NCBI GenBank assembly: GCA_000320545.1
Contig: ADNK01000452.1
Span: 8,261-72,260 of the forward strand
Source: Bigelowiella natans CCMP2755
Lineage: Eukaryota > Protista > Cercozoa
Direction of reading: 5' to 3'
Length of the DNA stretch: 64,000 nucleotides
Within the stretch, counting starts at the first letter, position 1, and each line of letters starts with the position of its first letter. The notes below the pieces were generated by a model. The model made no database searches, was not told the origin of the DNA, and saw nothing but the letters and a program-made list of their open reading frames with translations. Below are positions 41,410 through 47,333 of the stretch, piece after piece. A program made the position numbers and the translations under genes.

Positions 41410-43182
41410 CTACACACTGCTCAAATTTGATAATCGAACCGTCACCGCCGATGGTCTGCTGCTGGACTGCTCACCAGCCATGGCATGCTCACTATGATCA
41501 CCACTATTACCACCATTCCCGCTGCATTTATCCCCTGCTACCGTTGTTATGTCAGCAGCTTCTACGAAGTCTGCCGCCGTTTGCCGATGACCGCGAGGGC
41601 ACATAGTCGCAGCAGGCCTTTCCCCTGTCAAGGATTCCGATGGGGAGACACCAAAGGACACTTCCTTTTTGCCGCTGATATTTCCATTCGGATAATCGTG
41701 AATCTTCTTATCATCCGTGGAATGCTTGAGCTCGACGACCGGGTCACCGTCCTTCCAGATAGCGTCTGTGTTTCCTTTCACTTCCTCGTCACGGCGATGA
41801 CTGGGTGATTCAAAGCGCCTGGCCGCGGCGTTGGCGAGGCTGCGGCTCTTCTTGGGTTCATGCTTATGCAATGTGACGACAGATTTGTAGTACAATTTTT
41901 CTCTGTTATTATCTGCCTCTACCTCCTCCCATGACTTAAACGCAAAGCCAGTAGCAGCAGCGATCACATAGAGCAGGTTCAACCCCCCCCAGAACACGAC
42001 GAACACTATGGCGCATAGGATGTCTAATCCCCGCGCTGCTGCGTCTGAGATGAAGAATACAAATACGGCCTCGAGCGCCACGAAGGCCATGAGGAGGTAT
42101 ATGCACAGGATGTACATATCCATCACCTTGGTTAATGCGATTCGCCGCCACCGCCGCCACCAGCAAAAACAACACAGCAGCAAATGGGGAGAAGATGTAT
42201 GTCGTTAAAGAGCACTAGCGTAGACACACATAAATGCGACACAGCTATACTCGCATCGCAATCATCAGTCAATGGAAGCCGCCTCTCCGCAGCAAAAGAA
42301 GAGCAGCGGCGGCACTGGCAGTAGGCGTCGGGGCTAGTGGGATGAGGGGGGTCAATATTATTCGCAGCATTATTACCGTCGTATAGGATATGATCGGAAG
42401 CACCGAGGATATCCACAGCTTGAACGCGACGATCGTCAGCAGCAGCCTGATGACCAGCGTCAGCCTCGCCTCGAGATTCCTCTCCGAGTCCACGTCGAAC
42501 AAGAACGCCCCGGCCCCAATCATCGTGATGATGAAGGCTGGCAGCACCATATTGAGGAAGTAGAAGTTCTGGTAGCGTTGCACTCGAGCGATAAACTGTA
42601 TCACGCCGCCATCCAGGTCGTAAGTCACCGTTGCTTCCTGGCTACAGTATCTGTATGCATAGGGGCAAGAATCGGCGAGACCGATGACGGAGGGAGGGGA
42701 GAAGGAGGAGGAAGAGGAGAACGGGAGCAGCTTAGAGGAGTGAGCACAACAATAATCGCACAACCCCCTTCAAATCCCTCATCAAGCACAATCAACAGGA
42801 TATCATATATTTATACAAATGCATAGGAAGGGGTGTGTGCGCCTCCTCCTCCCCCCCCTCCTCATCCTCGTCGTCGTCGTCGTCGTCGTCGTTGTGCGCA
42901 TCATCATCCCTATCATCATTCACTGTGCTGCACGATATATGGTGTCGCACGGACTCCGCTCTGGCTCGCGCGGCAAGCTTGATGTGGCATTGCGACTCGT
43001 TGAGGTGCGAAGGGAGCTTCCATTTGTCCGGCGGCTTCTCACAGAACACCCAATCGCCGGTGTCAACAAGCAGCGGGATGTGGAGCAGCTGGCGGTCAAA
43101 CGGAAAGCGACCCAGCTCCATCTCCTCTTCGAGACTATCGTTAGCCCGTCCCCATTACCACGTACACATACACACAGAGAGA

Positions 43183-43219
<37 letters not shown>

Positions 43220-45605
43220 CGCACGCCACACATTCGCACATAGTACAATAAGTTTAATGATAGCTGCTTAACTTTCATTTATTTACTGAATCTAATAGAT
43301 GGATGGATGGATGGATGGGACAGCGTTTTCTCTGCCGCCGCCGCCTCCTCTCTAATCGATTTGCCACCACCCCCCCAACTCTGTACCACCACCCCACCAA
43401 TTGGTAGCTCTGCTGCTGCTGGTTCCTGACCTGATGCTGAGTTTGTAGCGCCCATGAACTACACCAACTTGCGAGTAGAAATCCTCCTCCCGGTGCGTGA
43501 TCACAAGCGACCGGCCTAGGCCGTTGGCAAACAACCGGTTGAACGACAACGGAAGCCGATCTTCTCCCTTCCTCGTCAGGGCGATGGGGCATCTCGGAAA
43601 GCAGCGCACGTCGGTGTCTTTGTCGTCGTCCATGATTGGAATCGCGCGCTTTTCCGCGAAGATGTCCGGGTCCTTCCAGAAGATGTTGAGTTCGCACGCA
43701 ATGGAGAACTTCTCCATCTGTAGGTTTATTTCCTGTCAACCCATCAACCAAGGACGCTCAGCACGCAAGGCGGAAACCATCGCCACCACCGCCAACCCCA
43801 CCGTGAAAGAGAAAGAGGAAGAAGGAAGGGGGGTGCTTTGCTGTGGGCGAGTGTTCGCTGAGGGGAGTGCAGTAGCATTTCTTACCGTTACTTCGATATC
43901 TAAATGCAAGAAAACTTTGGACTTGGGGATCACTTTCACGACCAATTTTGGAGGAAAAGCAACCGAGAGACTATTTCCCCTAGTCCTCTTGTTGTTTTTC
44001 CTCGTTCCCTCCTCCTGCATAAGCCGGGTAAGACGAAGGATGTCACTGTTCTTCTGACTCTCATCGCGGTAGGCTCCCTCTATGAAGTAGTTGTTCTTGC
44101 CGTCGCTTGCAAAATCTCTGTGCAGATCGTAAAGCAGCAATGGCCTGCTCTTGTAGTAATCTGGAGATGAGTAATGATAGGAGGAGGAGGAGGAGGAGGA
44201 GGAGGAGGAGGAGGAGGGGGGGTGACAACAGGTTTAGACAACATAACATATGAAGTTAGAATAAAGTGGAGAGGGCAGAAGAAATATATACATGTACAGC
44301 AGCTGCGACTATTTGTCCACCACCCCCTTTTTCTTCTTTATCATCATCATTATCAACATCATCATCGCCATCAGCATTACCACTTCAATCTACACTATCT
44401 AGCAGCAGATTGTTCATACATTCCTGATGAGGTTGACGGCCAGACAACCTACATTCCTTCAGCTTCGACGGCTCCTTCGGCCAAACGAGAAAGAACTTCT
44501 TCCGCACTTCTCCCTCTCCCCCTTCTTTCTCCTCTTTCTCAACCTTACAAATGAGTTTCCATCCTGCTATTCGGAGATATCTGCTGTCTTTTTGAACGAT
44601 GCCCTCATACTCCTTCCGTATGGACAGCTTGTTCGAGAAGTTCTGGAATCGCAGATCGAGCAAGGTGAGGATGTGGCCTAGCTTGGAGATCCCAATAGCC
44701 CTAAGATCATCCTTTTCTAGCTCCAGCATCTGGGAACCGCTGATTTCGTTCTTTCTGTAGTGAGAAGGACAGTGACCGTGGAGTACAATTATTTGGCAGA
44801 TTATGGTCGTGGAATAATGTGAAAAGGGAGGCGAAGTCAGAAAGATGCGAGGAAGGGCAGGAAAAGTAGTGCGGCGGGCAAGACAAAAATCTCTTTGTTA
44901 GAAACCTGACCTGAAGATCTCCGCGTAACCAAGGCCAGGAAAAGTTTTCTCTACTACTTCTGCTAAAGCTTGGATATCAAGGTTTTCGATGGTCGAGTCG
45001 TGCTGCATCTGTCGCAATCTCTGGCTACCAAGCGACTCACAGTCGTGGCCAACTTCTCCCGTACCCCCGGAGTTTGCAGCTGCTGCCAGAGCGGCAAGAC
45101 TTTCATCGATATAACTCACAGACTTCTTTCGCCTCAACTGCATGTAAATGATTACTGTGTTTGTTCCTCAAAGGAAGTGGGGCAAATAATGTCGGATGTA
45201 ATCGCTCACCATCGTGAACTTTGGGAACATGTGTCTTGGACCTTAGCGAGGAGGACAGATTCGTTTGAACAGCAGTAATACCGAGTCACAACGTACAGAC
45301 TTATTTACATATTCAAAAAACAGAAATTAGTCAAAGCTGTCACAGACTCATCGCCAAGCCCTTCCTCTCTAGTCTACAGCCAATGGAAGGAGTGCCACAG
45401 CTTGCCCCTCGGACCTTACTGGTCTTCGGATATCCGCAGTCTACGCGGACTTAGATGTGCCCTGCAGGTAGTTCGGGTAATCATGGGGGCGACGAAATTG
45501 AATTAGACCCGAATGATGTGGGAGGTCGAAATGAAAGGTACAAGTAGTTCGCACGACGATGGGGTGATGAGCTTCCATGAACAGCTTGTACTCTTGGAGC
45601 ACCAT
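41410..45605 (-). CDS. Cys-less (Pro-loop) pentameric ligand-gated ion channel subunit with N-terminal SAM domain
   Basis: SAM: LAEVVEKTFPGLGYAEIFR|KNEISGSQMLELEKDDLRAIGISKLGHILTLL. ECD: FSIACELNIFWKDP and Pro-loop ELGRFPFDRQ. Pre-M1/M1: RVQRYQNFYFLNMVLP. M2: EARLTLVIRLLLTIVAF, then LPIISYT. M3: MDMYILCIY. M4: LDILCAIVFVVFWGGLN. The 5' exons are tentative. Confidence 0.85.
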
Positions 45606-46057
45606 GAAATCCCGGCAGTAACCGTGATTCAGAGCATTTCACGCCCCTTCAGTTGGACGGTTTTAGGCCAAAACCCGTAATCACGGTGCTCAGTCGGGGG
45701 AAAACTTCGTTCGGGCCCTGGTCGTACTCGTTGTTGGGGCGATGATTACGCAGCTCGCGAACGTAATCCCTGGGTCTCTGGTTAATACCCGATATTCTCA
45801 GGGATTCGGATGAGGACGTTGGTATTGGCATTTGAATGACTGTATCGTCACTTGTTGAGAAAATGAGAAACATTTTCTCCCGGAGACGTGTCGAAAGCCT
45901 TAGAATGTCTTCGGCTTGTAAAATATCGAGAGTTCTTTGGATGCGACACATGAAATATGGGCTGGAAGTAGTTAAATCTCCTTTGTACGAATCGAAATAT
46001 GCCATTAAAATCTGAAATCCTACGTTGTGAAAGCACAATCCAACTGCTGCGCCCGTA

Positions 46058-47333
46058 ATGCCCACCTCTGCTATTGCGAAGCCTATCCAGGACAACGATT
46101 GTGCCAAGGTCTGCATTCATAGTCATTGTTATGGAGATTAGCCTCACAGATGTTCCCTTCTCCATAGGGGCCTATCGTAGAAGCAACGTCGGACAAGAAT
46201 GGCAGCAATATTATCATAGCTGTTGCTCTTCTCGTCCTTTACTTTGGCATGAACCTTGTTTTCAATATCTACAACAAGTGGCTTTTCAACGGACCATTAC
46301 CTGCGCCAGTATTTGTCACAGCAACCCATCAGGTTGACACTGTACAGACTGCACGATGAAGCTCGAGCTAATAATTAATATATGTAAATTAGGTGTTTTG
46401 CTTCGCCGGTGCTCTCCTTGCGGCGTGCTGTGCTCCAGACAGCTGGTACAAACGCACTCCTCTCGAAGGCAGCGGTAGTGCAGCTACCTTGTTCTCCCCT
46501 GCTATCTCAAACCTAACATTTAGTTTACTTTCTCAGCAATGATCACGAAATTGATGATCATTCCATTCGGTTTCTGTATGAACATCGGGCTAAATAACAT
46601 CTCGTTACTATTCTGCACGTTGGCTCTGAACCAGTTGATTAGATCGTTTGCCCCTGTCACTGTTGCGATCGCTTCCTACTTCATCGAGGGAAAAAGCTAC
46701 TCATTCCCTAAACAAGCTACCCTGGCTTTTCTGGTCCTAGGCATTGTTCTTGGCGTGTCCTCATCACCTGACTTTGAGTTCCTTGGATTCATCATCTGTA
46801 CCGCATCCGTGGTCGGATCTACCCTTCAAGTTGTTTTGACTGGCTATTTCATGGGTGGCCAAAAAGTAACGTTGCATGTCTTCGATATCCTCCTCTACAC
46901 CGCTATTCCCTGCATAGCATTCCTTATCCCCATGGCCTACTTGGTCGGTGATCACATCAAACTTATTGAGGCCTTCGAAGCCCATGGACCCGCTCAATTC
47001 TTCGGACTTGTATTTGCGGGTGGCCTCATGGCGTTCTCGTATAACATCATTACGATCTGCCTGATCAAATTCACCTCCTCCGTCTACTACGCGGTAGCAG
47101 GGGGCTTCAAGGTGTGCCTTGTCATTGGAATGTCTTTCGTATTCTTTGACCAAAAGATCTCGACCTTGTCATTCATCGGAATAATCATATCGTGCATGGC
47201 ATTCGTTGGAAACTCGTACCTCACTTTCAGAGAGAAACAGCAGAAGAAGGAACAAGTTCAGCGGAAGTCTCTCGAAGAGGAGAACGAAGGATTGCTCAGC
47301 GGAAAGCAGAAAGTTGTTCAGGAGAGCGTGTAG
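46058..47333 (+). CDS. Triose-phosphate/nucleotide-sugar transporter (TPT, SLC35E-like; DMT superfamily)
   Basis: YFGMNLVFNIYNKWLF..PVFVTATHQ, NIGLNNISL..NQLIRSFAP and TSSVYYAVAGGFK motifs; about 10 TM segments; three short introns. Confidence 0.9.

What the first reader, a model, noticed from the sequence alone, without database searches (positions are those of the whole stretch)
43400..45605. SAM domain fused to a Cys-less pentameric ligand-gated channel with no visible signal peptide
A clear SAM motif (~44650-44980) precedes the pLGIC ligand-binding domain. The N-terminus I can splice (MVLQE|AHLSPRRLRISEDQ|SKTHVPK...) is hydrophilic. SAM domains are cytosolic or nuclear oligomerisation modules, while pLGIC ligand-binding domains are normally exported by a signal peptide. 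Inference: an inverted-topology or organellar channel gated from the cytosol, possibly clustered by SAM polymerisation. Cys-less pLGICs are known in protists, but I do not know a characterised SAM fusion.
Basis: partly seen in the sequence, partly recalled or inferred. Interest (0 to 1): 0.8.

Follow-up and report, generated by a model that had tools for sequence, protein, structure and literature searches.

The report
SAM-fused, signal-peptide-less pentameric channel gene
This alga gene makes a neurotransmitter-receptor-type channel subunit with an N-terminal SAM domain and no export signal, so its "ligand-binding" half most likely faces the cell interior, which has not been described for this channel family.

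Summary
The core observation holds. One 9-exon gene on the minus strand (about 45600 to 41410) encodes a 776-aa protein: SAM domain, about 150-aa linker, Cys-less pLGIC beta-sandwich, M1-M4, and a 179-aa hydrophilic tail. Spliced transcript contigs from three studies and a database protein (P0157) confirm a single transcript. Translation starts at MFPKFTM in exon 2, five codons after an in-frame TAA, so no upstream exon can supply a signal peptide.

The genome, most likely Bigelowiella natans, holds at least five paralogues. Two of them carry SAM and channel in one uninterrupted ORF. Orthologues occur in Amorphochlora and Lotharella.

An exhaustive profile search places the family in a protist clade with these features:
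- Almost no member has a hydrophobic N-terminus.
- M3-M4 loops are short and acidic, and C-tails are long.
- Positive charges sit on the ligand-binding-domain side.
- Cytosolic modules were fused independently: PH domains twice, and a SAM inserted into a foraminiferal ECD.

The best reading (about 0.65) is a pLGIC inserted upside-down and gated from the cytosol. This topology is inferred, not shown. SAM polymerisation remains untested. No paper in the searched library describes any of this.

The scan had already noted this same stretch from another window; that follow-up is withheld.

The parts
45415..45600 (-). Exon 1, 5'UTR only. The 5' end lies between 45532 and 45633.
   Evidence: contigs reach 45532, depth is zero from 45634 to 46027, and the joint 45415/45299 (GT..AG on minus) appears in X2 and X9. 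X1 retains this intron.
45210..45299 (-). Exon 2: in-frame TAA at 45245-45243, start codon at 45230-45228, first 7 codons (MFPKFTM).
   Evidence: Joints 45299 and 45210/45137. Translations. Identical to the start of P0157 and P0008.
44911..45137 (-). Exon 3: hydrophilic N-terminal region plus the first half of the SAM domain (SAM starts at 44978).
   Evidence: Joints. The exon maps to P0157 residues 8-82 without mismatch.
44420..44754 (-). Exon 4: second half of the SAM (to 44643), then the linker with the family-specific W...FFLVWP hairpin.
   Evidence: Pfam SAM_1 E 4e-6. Contig pieces 44420-44754 joined to 44160 and 44911. Maps to P0157 84-194.
43886..44160 (-). Exon 5: linker (YD hairpin, pre-beta1 helix) and beta1 of the ligand-binding-type domain, which starts near 43936.
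43431..43732 (-). Exon 6: beta2 to beta6 of the beta-sandwich.
   Evidence: Joint 43732/43886 and joint 43431/43134. AF2 pLDDT above 90.
42955..43134 (-). Exon 7: Cys-less Pro-loop (FPFD at 43095-43106) and the following strands. The donor is at 42955, not further downstream as in the truncated public model P0008.
   Evidence: Joint 42650/42955 in X2. P0157 agrees. The Cys positions of GlyR align to E and L in the paralogue alignment.
42377..42650 (-). Exon 8: pre-M1 RVQR motif, M1, the M1-M2 loop, M2 (0' Arg, 9' Leu, 6' Arg) and the M2-M3 LP..SY motif.
   Evidence: Neur_chan_memb E 3e-4 on P0157.
41410..42126 (-). Exon 9 (coding part): M3, an 8-residue acidic M3-M4 loop, M4 (to about 41950), the post-M4 SW motif, a 179-aa hydrophilic tail, and stop TAG at 41412-41410. 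The 3'UTR runs to at least 41300.
   Evidence: Joint 42126/42377.. Tail statistics.

Best explanation
SHOWN. A single expressed 9-exon gene encodes a 776-aa subunit with these parts:
- a hydrophilic N-terminus
- a SAM domain (residues 61-120)
- a linker of about 150 aa with conserved family-specific hairpins
- a Cys-less (Pro-loop) pLGIC beta-sandwich (270-472)
- four TM helices with a standard M2 (0' Arg, 9' Leu)
- a very short acidic M3-M4 loop
- a 179-aa hydrophilic C-tail

It belongs to a chlorarachniophyte family with at least 5 paralogues in this genome and orthologues in Amorphochlora and Lotharella.

INFERRED. There is no signal peptide and no hydrophobic segment before M1, so the roughly 470 N-terminal residues stay in the cytosol. 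M1 then acts as an N-in signal anchor. The subunit is therefore inserted upside-down relative to classical pLGICs:
- SAM, the ligand-binding-type domain, the M2-M3 coupling loop and the C-tail face the cytosol.
- Only the short M1-M2 and M3-M4 loops face the outside or an organelle lumen.

Five subunits would form a pore, by homology, gated by a cytosolic ligand or condition that is not yet known. The five SAM domains would serve to dock or cluster the channel. Which membrane holds the channel is unknown.
For: One gene, one transcript:
- GT..AG joints on the minus strand link all exons in contigs of three studies. X2 record 6 runs from the SAM exon to the Pro-loop exon.
- P0157 (776 aa, from a 2752-nt contig) equals the exon chain apart from 2 residues.
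- Paralogues L003 and L004 carry SAM plus channel in one uninterrupted ORF. L003 equals an MMETSP 'complete' ORF.

Domains:
- SAM_1 E 2.5e-8, above the cut-off.
- PDB phmmer E 1e-9 to GlyR, GABA-A and a GLIC chimera.
- AF2 pLDDT 80-94 for the SAM and above 90 for ECD and TMD. Foldseek E 5e-18 to 4cof, GLIC, sTeLIC and GluCl.

No signal peptide:
- An in-frame TAA lies 5 codons before the ATG in the mRNA.
- Depth is zero upstream, between 45634 and 46027.
- In-frame stops lie 2, 5 and 9 codons upstream of the first ATG in L003, L004 and L002.
- The maximum KD19 before M1 is below 1 in every member.

Clade context:
- Of 71 M-starting relatives, only 2 have an 8-residue window with KD of at least 2.5 in the first 45 aa, and only 2 have a 12-residue window of at least 2.0 anywhere before beta1.
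- Amoebozoan and dinoflagellate members have 230-2100 aa hydrophilic N-terminal regions.
- Independent fusions to PH domains: P0085 (E 3e-10) and P0106 (E 2.5e-10). P0106 is one ORF on an 8.8-kb contig next to RICTOR.
- A SAM is inserted inside the ECD of Bolivina P0084.
- These fusions lie in different parts of the tree.

Charges and loops:
- The pre-M1 flank is more positive than the M1-M2 loop in 95 of 117 sequences.
- K+R averages 6.7 on the LBD side against 2.5 on the other side, and the LBD side is higher in 108 of 117.
- The median M3-M4 loop is 11 aa and acidic. The median C-tail is 38 aa and reaches 260 aa.
Against: - No experiment and no trained predictor (SignalP, DeepTMHMM) was available. 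My hydropathy test was not benchmarked on signal-peptide-bearing pLGICs.
- Classical pLGICs also carry pre-M1 arginines, so the charge count is not discriminating without that control.
- The window protein has a weakly hydrophobic Ala-rich run (LAALAAAA, residues 21-28, KD8 2.3) after a basic stretch. It faintly resembles a signal peptide. It is absent from the Amorphochlora orthologue and from all paralogues.
- SAM can work in a lumen (STIM1 EF-SAM, from my own knowledge).
- One relative (P0021) has a hydrophobic segment before its ECD, so the clade may not be uniform.
- Pfam Neur_chan_LBD does not hit the window protein, and Neur_chan_memb is below the cut-off (21.5 against 28.1 bits).
- A pore-lining 6' Arg is unusual and could mean a non-standard or non-conducting homomer.
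- Expression is low in the one raw RNA run (10 reads from about 6% of the run).
Confidence: 0.65

Rival explanations
1. Classical orientation. SAM and the ligand-binding domain are exported to the cell surface or a lumen by a cryptic or non-classical signal, as the luminal EF-SAM of STIM1 is. The channel is then gated from outside like other pLGICs.
For: The weak Ala-rich run after a basic N-terminus in the window protein. All characterised pLGICs have an exported LBD (established knowledge). A few foraminiferal relatives begin with short hydrophobic stretches (P0010, P0026). P0021 has a hydrophobic segment before its ECD.
Against: The Ala run is not conserved in the orthologue or the paralogues. 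No other hydrophobic segment exists in the 180-470 residues before M1. In-frame stops close the frame upstream. PH-domain fusions in related channels and N-terminal extensions of 500-2100 aa without a hydrophobic segment are hard to export. Charges favour LBD-in.
Confidence: 0.15
2. Cytosol-facing, but not a ligand-gated ion channel. It would be a degenerate pLGIC fold used as a scaffold or sensor, or a constitutive or pH/ion-modulated pore without a small-molecule agonist.
For: Strong divergence from the Pfam LBD model. The 6' Arg in M2 is conserved with Amorphochlora. No ligand can be named. Prokaryotic relatives such as GLIC and sTeLIC are pH-gated (titles).
Against: The gating hardware is conserved across 117 relatives: the Pro-loop FP.D.Q, pre-M1 Arg, 0' Arg, 8'-10' LLT, M2-M3 P...Y/D and post-M4 Trp are at least 90% conserved. 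The paralogues have ordinary 6' residues.
Confidence: 0.12
3. Organelle import. The basic N-terminus is a mitochondrial or plastid-type presequence, and the channel sits in an organelle membrane.
For: The first 16 residues are basic and Ser-rich. The host has a complex plastid (established knowledge for chlorarachniophytes).
Against: Acidic residues follow at positions 18-19. The N-termini of the orthologue and paralogues are unrelated and often acidic. Chlorarachniophyte plastid targeting needs a signal peptide first (established knowledge), and none is present.
Confidence: 0.05
4. Gene-model artefact: the SAM exons and the channel exons belong to two neighbouring transcripts.
For: Public models of this gene are fragmented: P0008 lacks the TMD and P0045 lacks the N-terminal half.
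Against: Spliced contigs bridge the SAM and channel exons. P0157 spans everything. The ORF is uninterrupted within exon 4 from the SAM into the linker. Two paralogues are single ORFs. Orthologues in two other genera have the same architecture.
Confidence: 0.02

Closest known systems
Cys-less ('Pro-loop') pLGICs of unicellular eukaryotes (Jaiteh, Taly & Henin 2016, PMC4795631)
   Same: A Pro-loop without the two cysteines, a short M3-M4 loop and a protist host. This family falls within that broad group.
   Different: That inventory trimmed the N- and C-terminal segments. The text searches of that paper for 'signal peptide', 'N-terminal domain' and 'additional domain' found nothing, and its only uses of 'topology' concern a TMHMM check that hits have a pLGIC-like transmembrane pattern, not which side the LBD faces. 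Here the N-terminus carries a SAM domain, lacks a signal peptide, and the C-tail is long.
Prokaryotic pLGICs GLIC, ELIC and sTeLIC
   Same: Best structural matches over the whole chain (TM by target 0.64-0.74). Cys-less, with a minimal M3-M4 loop.
   Different: They are exported to the periplasm by signal peptides (established knowledge). They have no SAM domain and no C-terminal tail.
DeCLIC and other prokaryotic pLGICs with extra N-terminal domains
   Same: An accessory domain is fused N-terminally to the ligand-binding domain and is thought to modulate gating (abstracts).
   Different: The DeCLIC NTD is periplasmic and consists of beta-rich lobes. Here the module is a SAM, and PH domains in relatives. 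These are typical cytosolic signalling modules of eukaryotes.
Animal anionic Cys-loop receptors (GlyR, GABA-A beta3, GluCl)
   Same: Best sequence matches among solved structures (E 1e-9 to 1e-6 for the paralogue). Same M2 register and M2-M3 LP.vSY motif.
   Different: No Cys-loop disulfide, no signal peptide, no large M3-M4 intracellular domain, and an acidic residue at -1'/-2' instead of the PAR motif.
STIM1/2 EF-SAM (from my own knowledge, not tested here)
   Same: A SAM domain attached to a membrane protein of ion signalling, used for regulated oligomerisation.
   Different: The STIM SAM is luminal and sits behind a signal peptide. STIM is not a channel.

Membership tests
pLGIC superfamily (Pro-loop receptors) | Beta-sandwich domain followed by four TM helices, M1-M4 | tested here: met
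   AF2 model with pLDDT above 90 over residues 270-610. Foldseek matches whole chains of 4cof, GLIC, sTeLIC and GluCl, E 5e-18. phmmer against the PDB gives E 1e-9 for paralogue L003.
pLGIC superfamily (Pro-loop receptors) | Pro-loop motif F/Y-P-x-D-x-Q | tested here: met
   FPFDRQ at 43095-43112. P398 is invariant, and F397, D400 and Q402 are at least 90% conserved in 117 relatives.
pLGIC superfamily (Pro-loop receptors) | Pfam gathering thresholds for Neur_chan_LBD and Neur_chan_memb | tested here: inconclusive
   P0157: no LBD hit, memb 21.5 bits against 28.1. Orthologue P0156: memb 31.5 bits, which passes. The family is divergent, so membership rests on the PDB and fold matches.
pLGIC superfamily (Pro-loop receptors) | Pore-lining M2 with 0' basic residue and 9' Leu | tested here: met
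   R509 and L518 are at least 90% conserved. The register is read from the GlyR alignment. 6' is Arg in the window protein and in Amorphochlora, which is atypical.
pLGIC superfamily (Pro-loop receptors) | Pentameric assembly and ligand-gated conduction | not testable with these tools
   Inferred from homology only.
Cys-loop receptors sensu stricto | Two cysteines 13 residues apart flanking the loop | tested here: not met
   The positions are E and L. No invariant Cys among the paralogues.
Classical pLGIC membrane topology | Cleavable N-terminal signal peptide that exports the ligand-binding domain | tested here: not met
   An in-frame stop lies before the ATG. No hydrophobic segment precedes M1. 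The same holds in the paralogues and orthologues. The test is a hydropathy heuristic only; no SignalP.
SAM domain (PF00536 / PF07647) | Profile match above the gathering cut-off and a five-helix bundle | tested here: met
   SAM_1 34.6 bits (cut-off 23) and SAM_2 32.6 bits (cut-off 20.5) on P0157. Helices 62-72, 78-84, 89-94, 97-102 and 108-119 at pLDDT 80-94.
Polymerising SAM domains | Head-to-tail self-association | tested here: inconclusive
   The two-copy complex prediction scored 0.01 against a mark of 0.32. The tool's verdict was 'no answer'.

The most novel reading that the evidence does not exclude
A whole protist clade of pLGICs is built the other way round from every characterised member. 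The clade includes chlorarachniophytes, foraminifera, Amoebozoa, dinoflagellates and others. The 'extracellular' ligand-binding domain sits in the cytosol, so these would be pentameric channels gated by intracellular messengers or metabolites. They are repeatedly wired to cytosolic modules (SAM, PH). In dinoflagellates they are even fused into single-chain five-unit pentamers.
Probability: 0.55. Interest if true: 0.9.

Novelty: new variant of a known kind. Interest (0 to 1): 0.8.

Why it matters
All functional and structural knowledge of pLGICs assumes an exported ligand-binding domain: nicotinic, GABA-A, glycine, 5-HT3, GLIC and ELIC receptors alike.

A family whose sequence forces the opposite orientation would add an intracellular-ligand-gated class to the superfamily. 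It would also bear on what the ancestral eukaryotic pLGIC did before synapses existed. It would supply natural scaffolds, with SAM- or PH-tagged and possibly single-chain pentamers, for structural work and channel engineering.

The idea is directly testable. The proteins are short, homomeric candidates exist, and, from my own knowledge, one host genus (Amorphochlora) has been transformed.

The work also corrects fragmented public gene models for this locus.

Tried and rejected
- Pfam exon by exon found only the SAM half and a sub-threshold Neur_chan_memb hit. It was too weak alone, and was solved by using the single-ORF paralogues and P0157.
- The word-index protein search with L003 returned only itself. 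This says nothing about distant relatives, so the exhaustive profile search replaced it.
- The alignment of loose exons with the paralogues (A2) misplaced fragments and was not used.
- My first guesses for three splice sites were wrong and were corrected by the transcript joints: the exon 4 donor at 44453, the exon 6 acceptor at 43717 and the exon 7 donor at 42924. So was the ATG at 45143.
- The minus-strand ORF at 46116-45652, with a hydrophobic start, was considered as a possible signal-peptide exon. It was rejected: transcript depth is zero there, and an in-frame stop lies in exon 2.
- SAM-SAM complex prediction: 'no answer', so it counts neither for nor against.
- ESM Atlas feature search: scores of 0.79, consistent with a pLGIC and nothing more.
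The control was therefore not run.
- An N-terminal family profile and Pfam on the tiny exons of the fifth paralogue found nothing. Its SAM is seen by eye only.
- Search of the own genome with PF02931 found nothing, and the tool's controls did not ring either, so that result is uninformative.
Exons were searched by reference and compared one by one with the database protein P0157, which served as the full-length sequence.
Full report
**What is at the locus**

The window is eukaryotic: about 48% G+C, with short GT..AG introns full of microsatellites. On the minus strand, open-frame pieces between 45170 and 41410 read as follows:
- a SAM-like segment
- a region with the pLGIC hallmark FPFDRQ
- four hydrophobic helices with an M2-M3 "LP..SY" motif
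- a long hydrophilic tail

Pfam on the exons by reference found the second half of a SAM domain (SAM_1 E 4e-6, above the cut-off). It gave only a sub-threshold Neur_chan_memb hit.

**Gene structure from RNA**

Contigs of three independent runs (X1, X2, X9) hold 50-70% of the words of the 4.4-kb stretch and lie on it in spliced form. All joints are GT..AG on the minus strand. The exons are:

| Exon | Window coordinates |
|---|---|
| 1 | about 45600-45415 |
| 2 | 45299-45210 |
| 3 | 45137-44911 |
| 4 | 44754-44420 |
| 5 | 44160-43886 |
| 6 | 43732-43431 |
| 7 | 43134-42955 |
| 8 | 42650-42377 |
| 9 | 42126 to beyond 41341 |

- One contig (X2 record 6) runs from the SAM exon through the Pro-loop exon.
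- Depth is zero from 45634 to 46027. The next transcript, from about 46028, is a plus-strand gene with introns of about 60 nt.
- The frame that enters the SAM has a TAA at 45245-45243 and the first ATG at 45230-45228, so the protein starts MFPKFTM.
The ATG at 45143 that I first favoured is intronic.
- The coding exons add up to 2331 nt, which is 776 codons plus the stop.
- Each exon maps in order onto a database protein, P0157 (776 aa, from a 2752-nt contig), with two substitutions in total.
- Other public models of this gene are defective. P0008 reads through the exon 7 donor and lacks the TMD. P0045 is the C-terminal fragment.
P0157 served as the full-length reference.

**Domains**

- P0157 carries SAM_1 at 34.6 bits (cut-off 23).
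- The AF2 model of residues 1-610, built on a 117-sequence alignment, has a five-helix SAM (61-120, pLDDT 80-94), a poorly defined linker, and a beta-sandwich plus four helices at pLDDT above 90.
- Foldseek aligns that body to entire chains of GABA-A beta3 (4cof), GLIC, sTeLIC and GluCl (E 5e-18, TM by target 0.70-0.74).
- The single-ORF paralogue L003 matches a GLIC-GlyR chimera, GlyR alpha3 and GABA-A beta3 by sequence (E 1e-9 to 1e-7).
- In that alignment the two Cys-loop cysteines of GlyR face E and L, so the loop is Cys-less.
- The M2 register gives 0' Arg and 9' Leu.
- The window protein and its Amorphochlora orthologue have Arg at 6'. This is unusual and unexplained.

**A family, not an accident**

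- The genome (91 Mb, 3736 contigs) holds paralogues on C2141 (L002), C1524 (L003) and C3532 (L004).
- It also holds intron-rich copies on C3364 and C185.
- L003 (569 aa) and L004 (692-aa open frame) contain SAM and channel in one uninterrupted reading frame.
- L003 is identical to an MMETSP "complete" ORF.
- L002 has its SAM split by an intron at the same place as the window gene.
- L004 equals a Bigelowiella natans JGI model and P0006 another. The genome is therefore most likely B. natans.

The exhaustive profile search found 7983 relatives at E up to 1e-3. Only chlorarachniophyte proteins cover the SAM region:
- Amorphochlora amoebiformis GAB5353675.1 (P0156; UniRef name "SAM domain-containing protein")
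- Lotharella globosa (P0004)

In the tree, the window gene pairs with Amorphochlora (support 100) and L002 pairs with Lotharella (98). Five of the six SAM members form one clade (94), and L004 is unresolved next to it. This fits one fusion followed by duplications before these genera split.

**No export signal**

- In the window gene an in-frame stop precedes the ATG in the mature mRNA.
- In L003, L004 and L002, stops lie 2, 5 and 9 codons upstream.
- No 19-residue window before M1 exceeds a Kyte-Doolittle mean of 1 in any member.
- The only blemish is an Ala-rich run (residues 21-28, KD8 2.3) in the window protein. The orthologue and the paralogues lack it.
- There is no TM segment between the SAM and the beta-sandwich, so both lie on the same side of the membrane.

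**Comparative evidence for a cytosolic ligand-binding domain**

The nearest 117 relatives come from foraminifera (Nonionella, Bolivina), Amoebozoa (Amoeba proteus, Pelomyxa), dinoflagellates and unnamed metatranscriptomes.

- Signal peptides: of 71 that start with Met and have at least 20 residues before beta1, only 2 reach KD8 of 2.5 in the first 45 residues. Only 2 reach KD12 of 2.0 anywhere before beta1.
- N-terminal extensions: several have 500-2100 aa of hydrophilic sequence before the first channel unit.
- PH domains head two unrelated members, P0085 (E 3e-10) and P0106 (E 2.5e-10). P0106 is a single ORF on an 8.8-kb contig beside a RICTOR gene.
- A SAM domain is inserted inside the beta-sandwich of Bolivina P0084, after the Pro-loop.
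- These fusions sit in different parts of the tree.
- Loops and tails: the M3-M4 loop has a median of 11 aa, with mean 1.0 K/R against 3.2 D/E. A C-tail follows M4, with a median of 38 aa and up to 260 aa. This is the reverse of animal receptors.
- Charges: the pre-M1 flank is more positive than the M1-M2 loop in 95 of 117. K+R averages 6.7 on the LBD side against 2.5 on the other side.

**Mechanism proposed**

The roughly 470-residue N-terminal part cannot cross a membrane without a signal. M1 would therefore insert N-in. With four helices, the tail also ends in the cytosol. The pore would be the usual five-M2 ring, with the coupling loops (Pro-loop, M2-M3, post-M4 Trp) conserved.

Gating would come from the cytosolic side. 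The ligand is unknown and so is the membrane. The SAM may cluster or dock the channel. The only test I could run, a two-copy complex prediction, gave no verdict.

**Caveats**

- Topology is inferred from sequence.
- The hydropathy heuristic lacks a positive control; the attempt to fetch bacterial pLGICs failed.
- Classical receptors also have pre-M1 arginines.
- SAM can be luminal, as in STIM (my own knowledge).
- P0021 has a hydrophobic segment before its ECD.
- Pfam's LBD model does not see the window protein.

**Literature**

- Jaiteh et al. 2016 (PMC4795631) catalogued Cys-less protist pLGICs. They discarded the terminal segments, and my text searches of the paper found no 'signal peptide', 'N-terminal domain' or 'additional domain'; its uses of 'topology' concern a TMHMM check of the transmembrane pattern.
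- Searches combining pLGIC terms with SAM domain, pleckstrin homology, inverted topology, signal peptide or dinoflagellate found nothing relevant.
- Known accessory N-terminal domains are periplasmic ones in bacteria, such as DeCLIC.

**Verdict**

The architecture is undescribed. The cytosol-facing reading is the best supported explanation (about 0.65) and extends to a wider protist clade.

Noticed in passing
Relatives P0009, P0013, P0015/P0162 (Prorocentrum cordatum, Polarella glacialis) and P0019 (Symbiodinium natans); not in the window: Four dinoflagellate-type proteins of 2078-4071 aa each contain exactly five complete pLGIC units (ECD plus M1-M4) in tandem in one ORF, after a 230-2100 aa hydrophilic N-terminal region. 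They look like natural single-chain pentamers. P0018 has three units. No paper was found.
   Followed up: partly
Relatives P0085, P0106 (locus L020:4001-5539) and P0084 (Bolivina argentea): Independent fusions of cytosolic modules to SP-less pLGICs: N-terminal PH domains (E 3e-10 and 2.5e-10), and a SAM domain inserted inside the beta-sandwich after the Pro-loop.
   Followed up: partly
window 42500-42530 (M2, exon 8): The pore-lining 6' position is Arg in the window protein and in its Amorphochlora orthologue, where relatives have Thr, Val or Ala. A ring of five arginines in the pore is unusual. It hints at heteromers with the paralogues or at odd selectivity.
   Followed up: no
window 44420-44640 and 43940-44160; the same region in L002, L003, L004, P0004 and P0156: The SAM-to-ECD linker holds motifs conserved across the family: a W-x-[IV] ... 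[FY][FY]L-x-W hairpin, a [SG]-x-P-x(3)-[YF]-D-[LN] motif, and a helix before beta1. AF2 gives them low confidence. They may form a small family-specific subdomain.
   Followed up: no
G000:C3364:1400-6700 (L018) and G000:C185:2135-4039 (L019): Two further paralogues are broken into many tiny exons by microsatellite-filled introns. The public model P0006 starts inside such an intron (its 'LSLSLS' start comes from a CT repeat). SAM-like pieces upstream on C3364 were seen by eye only; Pfam did not confirm them.
   Followed up: partly
window 45300-45414 and 45415-45600: The 5'UTR carries several upstream ATGs and short ORFs. One run's contig (X1) retains the first intron while X2 and X9 splice it, so translation may be regulated.
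   Followed up: no
window 46028-47200, plus strand: A divergently transcribed neighbour with three introns of about 60 nt (46107-46165, 46331-46390, 46474-46535). Its product looks like a sugar-phosphate or nucleotide-sugar transporter by eye. It is expressed more strongly than the channel gene in the same contig sets.
   Followed up: no
window 42795-42954: Intron 7 stays open in frame and encodes an acidic D/E run. Reading through it produced the truncated public model P0008 (500 aa, no TMD).
   Followed up: yes
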